Shown in pieces: positions 3,031 through 9,911 of a DNA stretch of 14,727 nt. Made by a program: the position numbers and the translations under genes. The notes beneath the pieces are model-generated. The model saw only the letters and a list, made by a program, of their open reading frames with translations, ran no database searches and was not told the DNA's origin. Numbering within the stretch: position 1 is the first letter of the stretch; every line of letters starts with the position of its first letter. The stretch is from Fonticula alba ATCC 38817 (Eukaryota > Protista > Nucleariida), in NCBI GenBank assembly GCA_000388065.2, contig KB932207.1; one strand, written 5' to 3'.

Positions 3031-4643
3031 GGCACAGCCCATGATGCGGCGGGATTGCGCGATGAGTGAGTAGGCGCCAGGGCCGTCATGGATGTGGCGC
3101 GCCCAGGAAGCTGGCATCGGACGTACAGGCCACCAACGAGGTGAGGCGCGGCTGGAGGGTAAACGAGGGGGACACGGTGCGGGTCGGGCACCGGGCGTGC
3201 GGTGTCCTCCGGGGTGGGGGGGGGACCGGTGCTGGCAGACAAAGACGCAGGGAGGGAGCGGAGGTCGGCGAGGGGCGGGGAGGAAGGAGGAGAAAAGGTC
3301 GGGAGCAAGCTACAGAGGGGCGAGGCGGTGCTGGTCCTTTCCCCCCTCCACCCTCCGTGGAAGCAGGACTTATGCATGTACGACATATATGCCGGCCGCC
3401 CGAGGCCCGGGCGACTTGCCGAGGCCCGGGCGACTTGCCGAGGCGCCGAAGCCCCGGCAGGCGTGTCGGGCCCCTGGTTGACCAGCAACCGCACCACCGA
3501 GGGCCCCGGTGCGCTCCTGGCCGGCCTGGACCCCGGAGGGACCCAGGACGTCGTCCGTGTCGAGCACCCGAGTGAACACATCCGCCTGTGTGAGCGAGTT
3601 AAAATGCCTCCCCGACAGTCGGCTCGACGGTACCAAAGCCCGGGGCCCGAGCCGCGGCGAGGCCCGGCCGGGAGGGCTCCAACGCGAGGGCGCGATCGGC
3701 CCGAGTGGCATTTCCCAGCCCACAATCCATTGGCCTCCGGGGGGGGGGGGAAGATGCCCGAGTGGCACACGCGCGCGCGTCCATGCCCCTCGACACGAAT
3801 GCGCGAGGACATCAGGCTGCGTAATGGCGGCGATGGGGAAATGTCCCCCCCCCCCCNNNNNNNNNNNNNNNNNNNNNNNNNNNNNNNNNNNNNNNNNNNN
3901 NNNNNNNNNNNNNNNNNNNNNNNNNNNNNNNNNNNNNNNNNNNNNNNNNNNNNNNNNNNNNNNNNNNNNNNNNNNNNNNNNNNNNNNNNNNNNNNNNNNN
4001 NNNNNNNNNNNNNNNNNNNNNNNNNNNNNNNNNNNNNNNNNNNNNNNNNNNNNNNNNNNNNNNNNNNNNNNNNNNNNNNNNNNNNNNNNNNNNNNNNNNN
4101 NNNNNNNNNNNNNNNNNNNNNNNNNNNNNNNNNNNNNNNNNNNNNNNNNNNNNNNNNNNNNNNNNNNNNNNNNNNNNNNNNNNNNNNNNNNNNNNNNNNN
4201 NNNNNNNNNNNNNNNNNNNNNNNNNNNNNNNNNNNNNNNNNNNNNNNNNNNNNNNNNNNNNNNNNNNNNNNNNNNNNNNNNNNNNNNNNNNNNNNNNNNN
4301 NNNNNNNNNNNNNNNNNNNNNNNNNNNNNNNNNNNNNNNNNNNNNNNNNNNNNNNNNNNNNCCCCCCCCCGGACCGAGTACCGGGCGCACGGCCGACGGA
4401 CTCCCGACGGGGGGGGGGGCGGCACCCTGGGTGATCGCCTCATTCGCCCACTCGGCGCCCGTCCGGGCCCGCGACCTCCGCACCATCCCCGGCCCCCCAC
4501 CCTGGGAGAGACACACCACCGGCCGACATCCACTGCTCCATCCTCGGGGACCGGGCCCCGGTGTCGCTTCAGATGCATCCCCCAGGAGAAGTCTCCCCCA
4601 CCCGGCACTCGGGGGACCCAGGTGCCCATCTCTCTCTCTCCCC

Positions 4644-4935: not shown

Positions 4936-5150
4936 GTCAGGGCGTGCTTCCCCCCCCCCCCCTTTCGAAGAGCCATACGTCTCCGGGGCTGGCAGCGCCC
5001 GAGATGCCCGGGCAAGTCTGCCCCCGACTCTACCCCCCCCCCCCCCCCACACACACACACACACACAGCCCGGCCCCCGCCCCTTTTCCTTTTGGACGTC
5101 GCCTTTTGTCTGTCTATCGGGATGATTGTGTATCTCATACGTGTACACAT

Positions 5151-5156
5151 TTTATT
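5151..5156 (-). promoter_or_regulatory. polyadenylation signal AATAAA, probably for the 242-aa ORF transcript
   Basis: Plus-strand TTTATT at 5151-5156, about 420 nt downstream of the TAG at 5577, in an AT-richer patch. Confidence 0.5.
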
Positions 5157-5534
5157 GGCAGAAGGGAGAAAACATACGAAGGTGCGCGCGCCATCGCACT
5201 CTCGAGCGCGAGCATCTACATGTGCGCGGGCGCATGTGCGTACAGGTATAAGAAATGTGTACTTACACACATACACACATGCACACACGCACACTCACAC
5301 CGGACACCGTCGCAGCAACAGAAAGGAGGAGTGGGGACATTCAAAGGGCAAGGAGGATAAGGGCGGTCCCCGGAGGAGAATAGAGCAGAGGGGGGAGCAA
5401 GGGGGAAACGAGGAGCAAGGGGGAAAGTGGGAAGACAAAAACGCAAGAAGGGGGGGGGGACTCATGGGAGAGCCCCGCCCCCCTCTCTCCCCCCTCTGCC
5501 GGAGGCGGTGCGGTGCGCACACAGCACCACGCAC

Positions 5535-5569
5535 ATGCGCGATGCGCGATGCGCGATGCGCGATGCACG
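5535..5569. repeat. 7-bp tandem repeat (ATGCGCG)4 + ATGCACG
   Basis: Directly visible, 7 nt downstream of the 242-aa ORF stop. Confidence 0.9.
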
Positions 5570-5576
5570 CACGGCT

Positions 5577-6305
5577 CTACTTCTTCTTCTTCTTCAGGGG
5601 ATGGTGCTTCTTCTTCTTCTTCTTGTCGGCCGAGGCTGCACCACCATCGGCCCCATGCTTGGCGGTGATCGGCCGATGGGAGTAGAGCTTCGTCTGGCCC
5701 CCGTCAACGGGTGACCGCGTGTTGGAGAAGAGGTTCGCCGTGTCGATCTCCCCCGGCATCAGACGAGACTTGCCGGTGGCGGATGCCGCCGGCGGGGGCT
5801 TGGTGGTGTCACCCAGGCCGGGCGAGTCGGAATCGGAGCCCGACGAGGAGGAAGATGAGGAAAAGCCCGAGGAAGAGGAGAAGGAGGAAGAGGCGCCACC
5901 GGCAAAGGCCGACGCCGGACCACCGGTGAAGGCGTGCATGATGGACGGGTCGTAGACAAAATCGTCCTCCAGACCGTCGCTCTCGTCGGCCGAGGCCAGT
6001 CGCCGGAGCTTGGCCATGAACTGGGCCTCAGTCAGCCGGTCGACCGCCTCCTCCGGGGTGGCCACCTCCTCCGGGGCCATGCGCGACTCCATGGTCCGCA
6101 ACAACGCCCGGTAGAGATCCGCCTCGGGCCGAGAGACCGCCGGGTCGTCGGCCGACTGACGCAAGAGCACAATCACCAGCTCGTTGATGATGTCGGTGAA
6201 GATGTCATCCGGCGATGGATCGCCCTCCTGCACGCCAGAAGCCTCCTGGGCGTCGAGCAGCTCCAGGTGTGCCAGCACCCGGGTGTACTTCTCCGGCGAC
6301 GCCAT
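5577..6305 (-). CDS. hypothetical protein, 242 aa: acidic helical N-half, Ser-rich linker, Lys-rich C-terminal tail (probable nuclear/nucleolar signal)
   Basis: Uninterrupted ORF with perfect Kozak context GCCGCCATGG at 6305, GC-ending codons like neighbouring genes, and stop TAG 5579-5577. Ends DKKKKKKHHPLKKKKK. AATAAA on the same strand at 5156-5151. No family confidently recognised. Confidence 0.75.
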   Translation of the reverse strand: MASPEKYTRVLAHLELLDAQEASGVQEGDPSPDDIFTDIINELVIVLLRQSADDPAVSRPEADLYRALLRTMESRMAPEEVATPEEAVDRLTEAQFMAKLRRLASADESDGLEDDFVYDPSIMHAFTGGPASAFAGGASSSFSSSSGFSSSSSSSGSDSDSPGLGDTTKPPPAASATGKSRLMPGEIDTANLFSNTRSPVDGGQTKLYSHRPITAKHGADGGAASADKKKKKKHHPLKKKKK

Positions 6306-6320
6306 GGCGGCCGCTGTGAA

Positions 6321-6898
6321 TTATTTGGCCGATGTGAAGAGGTCTGTGGGTTTGGGGAGCAGAGGGGGGGAGAGAGAGAGGGGGAGGGAGAGAGGGGGGG
6401 AGAGAGAAGGGGAGAGAGAAGGGGAGGGAGAGAGAGGAGGAGGGAGAGAGAGGAGGAGGGAGATAGACAGAGAGAGAGAGAGAGGGAGATAGACAGAGAG
6501 AGAGAGAGATAGACAGAGAGAGAGAGAGAGAGACAGAGAGAGAGAGAGAGATAGACAGAGAGAGAGAGAGAGATAGACAGAGAGAGAGAGAGAGAGAGAA
6601 GAGGAAGAGGGTGCAGCGCCAGCAGCAGCGAGGGGAGGCACGCGTGTGAGGACAGGGCACGGATATGAGCACGCAAGGACGGCCAGCGAGGCGGAGAGGC
6701 GCAGGTGAAGGATGGATATGGCGAGAGCGGCACGGTGTCCGTTTTCATGGAGGGAAGGCGCACACATCGGACACCCAGGCGCCGGGAAACAAGGCGAGAA
6801 GAGGAGAGTGCGAGCACAAGCAAGCGGGAGAAGATGGAGCAAGAGGGGGAGGAGCGCGACGTATCGGGAACAGGCCCGGGATGCGCAGAGGGACGAAC

Positions 6899-6936
<38 letters not shown>

Positions 6937-8976
6937 GGGGAGGGGGTGTGAGCAGATGGAAGTGCAAACAGGAGGCCATTGAAAGGGCCCACTCCGTCCC
7001 CCGCTCGCACCATCCCCCCCACTCGAGGGAGCGGCGCAAAGGAAGTGTGGGAGAAGGAGAGCCGGAACGCACTGCGAAGCTTGGAGAGGAGAGAGTCGCT
7101 CGGGGCCGACGCCTCGGTCGAGTCAGCGCCCGCCGAGGGGGCAGCCGCCGCAGCGGCACCACCATCGTCAGAGCCAGCGGCCGGGGTGCCACCCTCACCG
7201 GAGGCCGTGGCCTCGGGGCTGGAGGAGTCGACCGGGGCCGTGGTGGTGGCAGTGGCGGCAGCGGCCGCCGCCGCGGTGGCAGCCTCCTTGGCCGCGCCCG
7301 CCCTGGCCGCGCCCTCCCGACGGGCGATGATGGCCCGCGCCGCGGCAGCCGCCTCGGCAGCCGCCTCCGGCCCCGGGCGCATGCTGTCGGCGAAGGTGCG
7401 CAGGAGCACCGTCTGGGCTTCGGTCAGCGGCCGCTCGCCCAGGGCCCCGGGCATGCGGACATTGATCGACACAACATGGTCACCGCGGCGCGGACGCCGG
7501 GAGCTGTGATCCGACACATAGGGCACACCCAGCCGCGGGAGGCGGATCTCGGCCCCGGTATTGGACCCGGCCGGCACATCGACCAGCTTCGTGCCGTCGA
7601 TGGTGTTGACCGGGAGCCCCTGGATGCCGAGCAGCGCGTCGGCCAGCGAAATGTCCACCCGGGCCACGATGTCGTGCTCCTTGCGCTCCCAGCCGCGGGT
7701 ATTGTCACGGGTGGCCACCTGGAAGACCACGGTCAGGTCCCCGGGCGGGCCCTTGCGGGAGCCGGCCCCGCCGCTGCCGCCAATCTCCATGGCATTGCCG
7801 TCGGCCATGCCGGGAGGCACCTTGATGGTCACGCGCTTGTGGTCCAGCACCACGCCCTCGCCCTCGCAAGGGTGGCACAGGAACTCCTCCTGCCCGGTGC
7901 CATTGCACGAGGGGCACATTTGCACGTAGGAGGCATTGAGGAAATTCTGCCGGACGAATTTGCTCCCCCGGCACTGGGAGCACACCCGCGGCCGGGTGTT
8001 CTTGCTGGTGCCGGCTCCGGAGCACGAGGGGCAGGTGACCGCCGCGCGGAACTCCACCTCCTTCTCGCACCCGGTGATGGCCTCCACCAGAGTCAGGCTG
8101 ACATTGGCCACGACATCCTCGCCGCGTCGGCGGAACATGCCGCCCGGGCCGCCGCCCATTCCCTGGCGCATCATGTTCTCCAGGATGTCGGAAAAGATGT
8201 CCCCACTGCCGTGGCCGCCATGGCCGCCGGCCCAGTTGAAGTCGAACCCGAAGCCGTCCATGCCACCGGCGTTGGGCCCGACCCGGCCAGCCTCAAGCAG
8301 TGTGTCATACTGGGCGCGCTTCTCCTTATCGAGCAAAATCTATCCCGGGGGGGGGGGGAGGAGCAGAGTGAGTCGTGTGTCGGCAACGTCAAGAGAATTG
8401 AGGCACGGGTGCAAGAAACAGTGGACGGGGGAAGAAAGAGAAGAAGGACAGAGGGGCGCATGAATCTCATGTGCACACGGGCACACAGACAGACACCGAC
8501 AGATACAGACAGACACAGACAGACACCGACAGATACAGACAGATACAGACACAGACAGACACCGACACACACGCACCTTCTTGGCCAGCAGGGCTTGCTG
8601 CAGCTTTTCCTGGTTCGAGTGGTCACCCTGGTTGCGATCCGGGTGCGCCTCGCGGACGATCTGGCCCGGCGGAGAAGGCACAATGAGAGGAAAGGGGGGA
8701 GGGGGGATCGGGGGGGGGGGGTCAGGCAATCGCAACACCAGGTGGAGGAGCACAGAAGGCAGGCAGAGGAAGGATCATGCATACCCGGGATGAAGCGGAC
8801 TTGATCTCGGCATCGGTGGCATTCTTCGAAACGCCGAGGACGTCATAGAGATTGAGCTTGAGCGCCTCCTCGGTGAGATTGCGCCGGACAACCGACGGCC
8901 CGGCGGTGGAAGAGGGAGGCTGAGTGTTGAAGGCCAGCCGGCTGGCGGCGAAGAGGCCACCCGAGCGGGCTGCCAT
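6321..8976 (-). CDS. dnaJ: type I DnaJ/Hsp40 co-chaperone, probably mitochondrial (Mdj1/DNAJA3-like), 4 exons, 521 aa in the preferred model
   Basis: Exons 8976-8785, 8660-8577, 8339-7073, 6343-6321; introns GTATGC..CAG, GTGCGT..TAG, GTGCGT..CAG with consistent phases. The spliced J-domain reads NLYDVLGVSKNATDAEIKSASSR|IVREAHPDRNQ...AKK|ILLDKEKRAQYD. Then a G/F region with DIF motif, four Zn-finger repeats (CPSCSGAG, CSQCRGSK, CPSCNGTG, CHPCEGEG) and CTD motifs (KVPPG, GDLTV, ISLADALLG, RGDHVV). The N-terminal 30 aa are R/S/A-rich with no acidic residues (presequence-like). The last exon gives ...LLSKLRNLFTSAK* and is less certain than the rest. Confidence 0.92.
6361..6598. repeat. compound (AG)n microsatellite with five GATAGACAG interruptions, inside DnaJ intron 3
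   Basis: GATAGACAG at 6462, 6488, 6508, 6550 and 6572. Confidence 0.9.
8491..8550. repeat. 10-bp-period minisatellite in DnaJ intron 2
   Basis: Units AGACACCGAC, AGATACAGAC, AGACACAGAC, AGACACCGAC, AGATACAGAC, AGATACAGAC. Confidence 0.9.
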
Positions 8977-9433
8977 GGCTGACGGGGGGGGGGGAGGAGG
9001 AGGAGAAGGGGATCAGTCACTGTGTGCGTGGGGGTGGCGGCGTGTAGGTGACGGGGCACAAGCAAACGCACTGGCCGAACGCAGGGAACCAGCCCGACGG
9101 CCCGCGGAGCCCAGGGCGGACATCAGGAGCGACATGGCGGAGGGGAGGAGGGGAGAGAGGGAGGGAGAAGAGGGGAGTTTGCCGAGAGCCGAAGCGCGTG
9201 GTGGGTATAATCAGGGATCGCAGGCAGACAGGTGCGCAATCAGAGTGCAGGGGAGCGGGGAGGGGGGAGGATCGCCCGGCAGATGCCTTGATAGGGAGGA
9301 GGGGGGAATCAGGCTCGAACGGGGCGAGGGGCGAGGGAGAGAGAGGGAGAGAGAGGCGAGGCAAGTTGAAAGTGGCCTCGAAAGTGCGAGATACTCGGAC
9401 CCCTTTGCGTTTTTTTTCTCCCCCCCCCCCCCC

Positions 9434-9555
9434 NNNNNNNNNNNNNNNNNNNNNNNNNNNNNNNNNNNNNNNNNNNNNNNNNNNNNNNNNNNNNNNNNNN
9501 NNNNNNNNNNNNNNNNNNNNNNNNNNNNNNNNNNNNNNNNNNNNNNNNNNNNNNN
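9434..9555. other. assembly gap (122 N)
   Basis: N characters following a C homopolymer. Confidence 0.99.

Positions 9556-9845: not shown

Positions 9846-9846
<1 letters not shown>

Positions 9847-9911
<65 letters not shown>
9847..9911. repeat. G65 homopolymer
   Basis: Directly visible; exact length may be an assembly estimate. Confidence 0.9.

What the first reader, a model, noticed from the sequence alone, without database searches (positions are those of the whole stretch)
6303..6346. DnaJ stop is 15 nt upstream of and in frame with the next ORF, bracketed by two same-phase splice acceptors: candidate fusion/dicistronic switch
Seen: the minus strand reads ...cccaCAG|AC CTC TTC ACA TCG GCC AAA TAA TTC aCAG|CG GCC GCC ATG GCG. 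With the phase-1 donor at 7072 (CGC A|GTGCGT), acceptor 1 (intron end 6344) gives ...KLRNLFTSAK* (521 aa, a plausible DnaJ C-terminus). Acceptor 2 (intron end 6314, 30 nt further) skips the stop and gives ...KLRTAAMASPEK..., a 759-aa DnaJ-orphan fusion. TAA readthrough would also be in frame (769 aa). The downstream ATG has a perfect GCCGCCATGG context, so it also looks like an independent start. There is no room for a DnaJ 3'UTR or a separate promoter between the ORFs. The only AATAAA seen on this strand downstream is at 5156, though AAATAAT overlaps the DnaJ stop. Inference: the options are (a) an alternatively spliced fusion joining a mitochondrial-type presequence/J-protein to a Lys-rich NLS-like tail, (b) a dicistronic mRNA, or (c) an orphan promoter inside DnaJ intron 3, with acceptor 2 ending a 5'UTR intron and the DnaJ 3'UTR overlapping the orphan CDS. 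Any of these is unusual for a nuclear gene pair.
Basis: partly seen in the sequence, partly recalled or inferred. Interest (0 to 1): 0.82.

Follow-up and report, generated by a model that had tools for sequence, protein, structure and literature searches.

The report
DnaJ stop skipped by alternative acceptor
In the amoeba Fonticula alba, two splice sites 30 bases apart decide whether a mitochondrial DnaJ chaperone ends with its ancient tail or runs on into a 242-residue protein found nowhere else; which site the cell uses could not be measured here.

Summary
The sequence observation is correct. The window is Fonticula alba.

Two new results:
- The downstream 242-codon ORF is truly coding. Its GC3 is 0.84 against 0.85 for DnaJ, and its codon score is +102 bits in that frame only. 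It has no homologue in about 1.8 billion representative proteins.
- The acceptor-1 reading is not a random stop. Exon 3 ends SLLSKLR, and only acceptor 1 completes it to SLLSKLRNLF-TSAK*. This is the extreme C-terminal motif found in 78 of 79 bacterial DnaJ sampled. Chance for the mini-exon part is 0.0005 to 0.003.

So the public model drops a conserved DnaJ end, and both acceptors look meaningful.

My best reading (about 0.4) is one transcription unit with an alternative 3' splice site. It would give a canonical 543-aa DnaJ or a 781-aa DnaJ-orphan fusion, loosely like human Tid1 long and short forms. Rivals are an internal promoter for the orphan (0.3), fusion only (0.15) and a true dicistron (0.05).

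Interest is moderate.

The parts
9072..9135 (-). It holds the start ATG at 9135-9133 and encodes the first 21 residues of an Arg-rich, acid-free, mitochondrial-type presequence. The donor is GCCA|GTGCGT.
   Evidence: the spliced translation equals the public protein P0001.
8785..8978 (-). DnaJ exon 1: the rest of the presequence and the start of the J domain. It follows a 93-nt intron at 9071-8979.
8577..8660 (-). DnaJ exon 2: the HPD part of the J domain.
7073..8339 (-). DnaJ exon 3. It holds the end of the J domain, the G/F region, four CxxC zinc-finger motifs, CTD1/2, and an Ala/Thr/Ser-rich linker of about 100 aa. It ends SLLSKLR (7094-7074) plus one base.
6344..7072 (-). Intron to acceptor 1, 729 nt. 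It begins GTGCGT, has no AG from 6992 to 6344, and its last 250 nt (6354-6603) are a (CT)n-derived microsatellite array. It shows no coding signal in any frame.
   Evidence: RNA runs hold about 0.48 of the sampled words of 5577-7100, which equals the ORF part alone.
6314..6343 (-). The 30-nt switch segment between the two CAG acceptors. It encodes (N)LFTSAK and the stop TAA at 6323-6321. It also holds a branch-like TTCAC (A at 6335), 21 nt before the end of acceptor 2.
5577..6313 (-). Exon after acceptor 2. The 8 nt CGGCCGCC are followed by the 242-codon orphan ORF, from ATG 6305 to stop TAG 5579-5577. The predicted product has four helices at low confidence in residues 4-105, then a Ser-rich disordered region and a poly-Lys end.
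   Evidence: GC1/2/3 are 0.61/0.50/0.84 and the codon score is +102 bits in this frame only. Searches found no relatives. One search gave the structure model.
5151..5156 (-). The only AATAAA on this strand downstream of the locus. It is a candidate poly(A) signal about 420 nt after the orphan stop.
   Evidence: Its use is untested. The word shares suggest that most of 5100-5576 is not in the RNA contigs.

Best explanation
I read this as one transcription unit, H696_04450 of Fonticula alba, with an alternative 3' splice site at its last intron.

- **Acceptor 1** (donor 7072 spliced to exon start 6343) gives a canonical 543-aa mitochondrial class-I DnaJ. Its last residues, SLLSKLR|NLFTSAK*, restore the family's extreme C-terminal motif. 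That region is described as the dimerisation domain in this class.
- **Acceptor 2**, 30 nt downstream and in the same phase, removes the NLF...TAA segment as intron. This joins the DnaJ, through its 100-aa low-complexity linker, to a lineage-specific 245-residue tail that ends in poly-Lys. The result is the 781-aa protein of the public annotation.

**Shown**
- The anatomy of the locus.
- The orphan ORF is coding.
- The motif is completed only by acceptor 1.
- The acceptor-2 product is identical to the public model.
- The intron is absent from the RNA contigs and the ORF is present in them.

**Inferred**
- That both acceptors are used.
- That the orphan began as a separate downstream gene with its own ATG and was captured by splicing.
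- That the poly-Lys tail adds nucleic-acid or nucleoid binding inside mitochondria.
For: 1. **Motif at acceptor 1.** 78 of 79 bacterial DnaJ from 80 loci end with [GS][FW][FLM][DSE][KG]V[KR]x[FL]F plus 1-11 residues.
   - The acceptor-1 reading SLLSKLRNLF scores 12.2 bits, with P 4.5e-6 per random 10-mer.
   - The fusion reading scores -4.8 bits.
   - The chance that a random segment after the acceptor gives at least this fit plus a stop within 10 codons is 0.0005-0.003.
   - HMMER aligns residues 528-540 to the tail profile. Of 30,000 shuffled decoys, 0.7% do as well anywhere and 1 does so at the C-terminus.
2. **The orphan ORF is coding.** GC3 is 0.84 against 0.85 for DnaJ and about 0.6 for the intron. 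The codon log-odds is +102 bits in frame and negative in the five other frames. It must therefore be translated by some route.
3. **Acceptor 2.** It puts the ORF in frame and is the public model. A TTCAC branch-like motif lies 21 nt upstream of it, close to the 24-35 nt seen in the three solid introns.
4. **RNA.** Four RNA runs hold the ORF but not the intron.
5. **Spacing.** Coding-scoring regions in the window lie more than 1 kb apart, and a 15-nt spacer leaves no room for a promoter.
Against: - No junction read was seen for either acceptor.
- The public annotation lists only one isoform, and it may rest on ab initio prediction.
- Acceptor 1 has no adenine 10-119 nt upstream. It would need a distant branch point, such as the consensus CTCAC 303 nt upstream at 6647.
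- Acceptor 2 has a poor pyrimidine tract.
- The ORF starts with Met three codons after acceptor 2, in the context GCCGCCATGG. This fits an independent start as well as it fits a fusion.
- The unspliced reading SLLSKLRSAF also fits the motif, although the GTGCGT donor largely forces that sequence and no stop follows for 243 codons.
- The plant mitochondrial DnaJ GFA2 (P0010) and its relatives retrieved lack the tail motif. Its retention in a eukaryote is therefore not the rule.
Confidence: 0.4

Rival explanations
1. Two genes that share a 3' end. DnaJ always uses acceptor 1 and stops at TAA 6321. The orphan is transcribed from its own start site inside the CT-rich 'intron' and translated from its own ATG. 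Acceptor 2 might end a 5'-UTR intron. The public 781-aa fusion would then be an annotation artefact.
For: - The acceptor-1 terminus is conserved.
- The Met sits in GCCGCCATGG at the very start of the coding signal.
- The DnaJ gene's own 5' flank is the same kind of CT-rich sequence.
- There is no ATG between about 6745 and 6305, so the orphan's ATG would be the first AUG of such a transcript.
Against: - The in-frame CAG 8 nt before the ATG would be a coincidence. I estimate about 0.05, by reasoning and not computation.
- The RNA word share of 0.47-0.49 leaves room for at most a few tens of bases of the intron in transcripts.
- Coding-scoring regions in the window lie more than 1 kb apart.
- The public model was built by a centre that had RNA-seq data (inference).
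Confidence: 0.3
2. Fusion only. Acceptor 2 is the sole 3' splice site in use, as in the public model. The NLFTSAK-TAA segment is a recent relic of the ancestral terminal exon and is now intronic.
For: - The public model.
- The branch-like TTCAC lies between the two acceptors at the usual distance from acceptor 2, and there is no adenine 10-119 nt upstream of acceptor 1.
- The long linker makes most sense as an interdomain linker (inference).
Against: - An unused relic should decay, yet the motif, its preferred codons (AAC CTC TTC) and the stop are all intact.
- Acceptor 1 is the first AG after an AG-free pyrimidine zone of about 650 nt. By established splicing knowledge, that is the classic signature of a used 3' splice site.
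Confidence: 0.15
3. A true dicistronic mRNA. Acceptor 1 is used, DnaJ terminates at the TAA, and ribosomes reinitiate 15 nt downstream at the orphan's AUG, or read through the stop.
For: The 15-nt spacing, the in-frame layout and the good AUG context. The ORF is coding.
Against: - By established knowledge of eukaryotic translation, reinitiation after a 543-codon ORF is very inefficient.
- TAA followed by T is a strong terminator context.
- There is no structured element at the junction (z +0.9; no Rfam match).
- The strong codon bias of the ORF argues for efficient translation.
Confidence: 0.05

Closest known systems
Human DNAJA3/Tid1 long and short isoforms (Tid1-L, Tid1-S)
   Same: Both are mitochondrial class-I DnaJ with two alternatively spliced isoforms (PMC4941349). 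From my own recollection, not read here, the Tid1 isoforms differ only at the extreme C-terminus.
   Different: Here the choice would lie between two acceptors 30 nt apart in one intron. The long form adds a whole 245-residue orphan region rather than a few tens of residues. Use of both sites is not shown. There is no sequence relation between the tails.
Bacterial DnaJ and yeast Mdj1 (class-I J-proteins)
   Same: - J domain with HPD, a G/F region, four CxxC motifs and CTD1/2.
- A C-terminal tail motif like the alphaproteobacterial GFFS[KR]VK[DE][FL]F.
- The extreme C-terminus of this class is described as a dimerisation domain, and Mdj1 binds DNA and nucleoids (PMC3750215).
   Different: - A low-complexity insert of about 100 aa separates CTD2 from the tail motif.
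- The motif is split by an intron.
- The scores lie below NCBIfam's trusted cut-offs for bacterial DnaJ equivalogs (260 against 377 bits), as expected for a eukaryotic homologue.
Conjoined or read-through chimeric genes, and alternative 3' splice sites that bypass a stop codon
   Same: An upstream gene's donor is spliced to an acceptor just before a downstream ORF. This skips the upstream stop and gives an in-frame fusion alongside the parental product. This is a known kind of event in eukaryotes (my own knowledge).
   Different: The two acceptors share one intron and lie only 30 nt apart. There is no intergenic region at all, and the downstream partner has no known family.
Polycistronic nuclear mRNAs of green algae and some fungi
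   Same: Two coding ORFs lie on one mRNA with a very short spacer.
   Different: As I recall, the described cases rely on leaky scanning past a short upstream ORF or one with a weak AUG context. Here the upstream ORF has 543 codons. None of this was tested.

Membership tests
Class-I (type A) DnaJ/Hsp40, mitochondrial or bacterial type | J domain with the HPD motif | tested here: met
   PF00226 matches residues 64-126 of P0001 with E 4e-16. HPD is encoded in exon 2.
Class-I (type A) DnaJ/Hsp40, mitochondrial or bacterial type | Cys-rich zinc-finger region (CxxCxGxG repeats) and the DnaJ C-terminal domains | tested here: met
   PF00684 has E 2.5e-8 and PF01556 has E 7.8e-33. TIGR02349 aligns over model positions 2-342 of 354. 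The best solved match is DnaJ 6jzb_A, E 7e-46.
Class-I (type A) DnaJ/Hsp40, mitochondrial or bacterial type | Extreme C-terminal tail motif (dimerisation region) | tested here: met
   Met only by the acceptor-1 product: SLLSKLRNLF scores 12.2 bits, and 1 of 30,000 decoys matches as well at the C-terminus. Not met by the public 781-aa fusion, which scores -4.8 bits.
Class-I (type A) DnaJ/Hsp40, mitochondrial or bacterial type | Mitochondrial targeting presequence | tested here: inconclusive
   The first 56 residues hold 7 Arg and no Asp or Glu. No targeting predictor was available and localisation is untested.
Alternative 3' splice-site (tandem acceptor) isoform switch | Both junctions present in mature mRNA | not testable with these tools
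A scan of metagenome contigs for either junction found nothing.
Alternative 3' splice-site (tandem acceptor) isoform switch | Both products keep an open, meaningful reading frame | tested here: met
   products of 543 aa and 781 aa, each with a single terminal stop. Both downstream readings carry evidence of function.
Dicistronic nuclear mRNA | Independent translation of the second ORF from the same mRNA | not testable with these tools
   This needs ribosome profiling or reporter assays. No structured element was found at the junction.

The most novel reading that the evidence does not exclude
The locus is a genuine dicistronic nuclear mRNA in a relative of fungi. DnaJ would terminate at its conserved TAA, and the orphan protein would be made from the same mRNA by reinitiation 15 nt downstream.
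Probability: 0.05. Interest if true: 0.8.

Novelty: new member of a known kind. Interest (0 to 1): 0.42.

Why it matters
- **The public record.** The public model of this gene (KCV69031.1, XP_009496602.1, A0A058Z4J6) omits the conserved C-terminal end of DnaJ and presents only a fusion.
- **If both acceptors are used.** A 30-nt choice would swap the chaperone's C-terminal motif (the dimerisation region of this class) for a lineage-specific tail ending in poly-Lys. That would be a compact, testable example of how a neighbouring gene is captured as an alternative C-terminus. It would loosely parallel the two spliced isoforms of human Tid1, where two forms of one mitochondrial DnaJ behave differently.
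- **If the orphan has its own promoter.** The lesson is then about annotation: coding-looking neighbours in this GC-rich genome can be merged into false fusions. That bears on the many 'fusion' genes noted in Fonticula.
- **Either way.** The matter can be settled cheaply with existing RNA-seq data.

Tried and rejected
**RNA evidence**
I therefore have no junction counts and no strain variation.
- I scanned JGI metagenome contigs for either spliced junction, using a pattern with a 0-30 nt gap. There were 0 hits.
- The word shares from the look-up of sequencing runs show the ORF present and the intron absent in RNA contigs. The 30-nt difference amounts to only about 3 sampled words, too few to tell the acceptors apart.

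**Relatives of the orphan**
- The search for homologous proteins found none.
- JGI metagenome loci: none.
- HMMER against 1.84 billion representatives returned only the protein itself and a tandem-repeat protein, P0006. Its E of 2.6e-4 is inflated by three repeats and I rejected it.
- Pfam: none.
- ESM Atlas: best score 0.72, not usable.
- AlphaFold with a single sequence gave pLDDT 51, too poor for a fold search.

**Database look-ups**
- An exact look-up of the 242-aa ORF and of P0001 in assembly collections found only the NCBI genome.
- Logan-derived proteins for these RNA runs seem not to be on record, so their absence says nothing.

**Structure at the junction**
- No RNA structure (z +0.9) and no Rfam family.

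**Readings I rejected**
- Intron retention as the real reading. It is open and in frame, but it has no coding signal and is absent from the RNA contigs.
- The idea that the orphan ORF is a chance ORF in GC-rich DNA.

**Literature**
- No paper mentions H696_04450.

Full report
**Identity of the locus**

The window is from Fonticula alba. A search with the exon-3 reading frame returned H696_04450 at 100% identity. Its accessions are KCV69031.1, XP_009496602.1 and UniProt A0A058Z4J6; it is 781 aa long and lies on the 2.16-Mb scaffold KB932207.1.

The protein is a class-I DnaJ:
- J domain, E 4e-16.
- CxxCxGxG zinc-finger region, E 2.5e-8.
- DnaJ C-terminal domain, E 7.8e-33.
- The bacterial DnaJ model TIGR02349 aligns over positions 2-342 of 354.
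- The best solved relative is DnaJ 6jzb_A, E 7e-46.

Its first 56 residues hold seven Arg and no acidic residue. That is the look of a mitochondrial presequence, but I could not test targeting.

**Check of the observation**

- The donor is CGCA|GTGCGT with its G at 7072.
- CAG acceptors end at 6344 and 6314.
- The TAA is at 6323-6321.
- The ATG at 6305-6303 sits in GCCGCCATGG, 15 nt after the stop and in frame with it.
- The only minus-strand AATAAA is at 5156-5151.

Splicing in silico gives ...SKLRNLFTSAK* with acceptor 1 and ...SKLRTAAMASPEK... with acceptor 2.

The products are therefore 543 and 781 aa.

The acceptor-2 product is identical, residue for residue, to the public protein. The 'candidate fusion' is thus the existing annotation.

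The intron to acceptor 1 is 729 nt, a multiple of three, and open in frame. This follows from its CT-rich make-up. Its last 250 nt are a (CT)n-type microsatellite and it carries no coding signal.

**Is the downstream ORF a gene?**

Yes. GC at codon positions 1/2/3 is 0.61/0.50/0.84, against 0.68/0.56/0.85 for DnaJ and a flat 0.6 for the intron and the 3' flank. A codon-usage log-odds trained on the DnaJ exons gives +102 bits in the ORF frame and negative values in the other five frames.

The ORF has no relatives:
- Nothing in the 5.8-billion-protein word search.
- Nothing in JGI metagenome contigs.
- A full HMMER pass over 1.84 billion representatives returned only the protein itself and a tandem-repeat protein whose E-value is inflated by three repeats.
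- Pfam and the ESM Atlas gave nothing usable.

A single-sequence AlphaFold model is poor (pLDDT 51). It suggests four helices in residues 4-105 followed by disorder. The end is KKKKKKHHPLKKKKK.

**Is the 'DnaJ stop' a real stop?**

This is the new result. I fetched 80 bacterial DnaJ loci and read their C-termini. Of the 79 with a complete reading, 78 end with [GS][FW][FLM][DSE][KG]V[KR]x[FL]F followed by 1-11 residues. Alphaproteobacterial examples read GFFSKVKEFF and GFFSRVKDLFN*.

Exon 3 of the Fonticula gene ends SDSLLSKLR. The acceptor-1 mini-exon continues NLFTSAK*, giving SLLSKLRNLF plus four residues.

| Test | Result |
|---|---|
| Position matrix, acceptor-1 reading | 12.2 bits; P 4.5e-6 per random 10-mer |
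| Position matrix, fusion reading SLLSKLRTAA | -4.8 bits |
| Random or shuffled sequence after the acceptor fits positions 8-10 as well and stops within 10 codons | 0.0005-0.003 |
| HMM of the bacterial tails | aligns residues 528-540 of the acceptor-1 product |
| 30,000 shuffled decoys, equal hit anywhere | 0.7% |
| 30,000 shuffled decoys, equal hit at the C-terminus | 1 decoy |

One caveat: the unspliced reading SLLSKLRSAF also fits (11.1 bits). There, Ser-Ala is forced by the GTGCGT donor and no stop follows for 243 codons.

The extreme C-terminus of this J-protein class is described as a dimerisation domain (PMC3750215).

I conclude that TAA 6323-6321 is the ancestral DnaJ stop, probably still in use, and that the public model drops a conserved end.

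**Splice signals**

GTGCGT is strongly over-represented in the window, 20 occurrences against 4.9 expected. It starts three of the gene's four introns.

The three solid introns carry a CT[GC]A[CT] branch-like motif 24-35 nt before the AG.
- **Acceptor 1** is the first AG after an AG-free zone of about 650 nt. It has no adenine 10-119 nt upstream. The nearest consensus motifs, CTCAC and CTCAT, lie about 300 nt away.
- **Acceptor 2** has TTCAC 21 nt upstream, between the two acceptors, but a weak pyrimidine tract.

Each site therefore has a conceivable branch point of its own, and the sequence alone does not pick a winner. No RNA hairpin or known RNA family sits at the junction.

**RNA evidence**

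Four 2012 RNA runs of the organism hold 0.47-0.49 of the sampled words of 5577-7100. That equals the ORF part alone; DNA runs hold 0.91-0.93. The same runs hold 0.52-0.57 of the words of 5100-9000, which equals the coding exons without most of 5100-5576.

So the intron is spliced out and the ORF is expressed about as well as DnaJ. The 30-nt difference amounts to only about three sampled words, so this cannot separate the acceptors.

A scan for either spliced junction in metagenome contigs found nothing.

**Weighing the explanations**

Acceptor 1 must matter, because the motif and stop are kept. The ORF must be translated, because it shows codon bias.
- **Alternative 3' splice site (about 0.4).** This satisfies both requirements. 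It also explains the in-frame CAG 8 nt before the ATG and the public model.
- **Internal promoter for the orphan, with DnaJ's 3' UTR running over it (about 0.3).** This fits the Met in a good context at the very start of the coding signal, and the CT-rich upstream sequence, which resembles DnaJ's own 5' flank. It makes the in-frame acceptor a coincidence.
- **Fusion only, with a recent relic (about 0.15).**
- **A true dicistron (about 0.05).**

Coding-scoring regions in the window lie more than 1 kb apart and the called genes are likewise well spaced. A 15-nt 'intergenic' spacer is not ordinary tight packing.

**Comparison and novelty**

The nearest analogue is human Tid1/DNAJA3, a mitochondrial DnaJ with long and short alternatively spliced isoforms (PMC4941349). 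Conjoined genes and stop-skipping alternative acceptors are known kinds of event.

The fusion itself is already public. What is new is that the alternative acceptor restores a conserved DnaJ terminus, and that the appended part is a true coding orphan.

I file this as a new member of a known kind, of moderate interest, pending junction counts.

Noticed in passing
window 5567-5572 (minus strand): A consensus donor hexamer GTGCGT lies 5 nt after the orphan's stop codon, and two more lie at 5534-5529 and 5292-5287. The RNA runs seem to hold few words of 5100-5576 (share 0.57 where about 0.69 would be expected). A 3'-UTR intron or an early poly(A) site are both possible.
   Followed up: partly
window 6354-6603 and 8483-8561: Two of the DnaJ gene's introns carry long microsatellite-like arrays: (CT)n with a 22-nt TCTGTCTATCTC... 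period, and a 10-nt or 30-nt CTGTCTGTGT period. The first forms an AG-free pyrimidine zone of about 650 nt before acceptor 1.
   Followed up: partly
window 3856-4371 and 9434-9555: Two assembly gaps (runs of N) are flanked by long G or C homopolymers. Homopolymer runs of 15-60 C or G are frequent across the window, for example 9846-9906.
   Followed up: no
The annotated DnaJ start at 9135 does not. This echoes an unchecked scan note that acceptor-like sites precede many start codons in this genome.
   Followed up: partly
runs X29-X34 (no window coordinates): Soil and sediment metagenomes, and DNA runs labelled with another organism, hold 0.29-0.66 of the words of this locus. Near-identical Fonticula strains therefore occur in environmental samples and could supply polymorphism data.
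   Followed up: no
window 3086-3812 (minus strand): The public annotation places a 103-aa gene with no Pfam hit here. My codon-usage scan found no coding segment scoring above threshold in it, so the model may be spurious.
   Followed up: no
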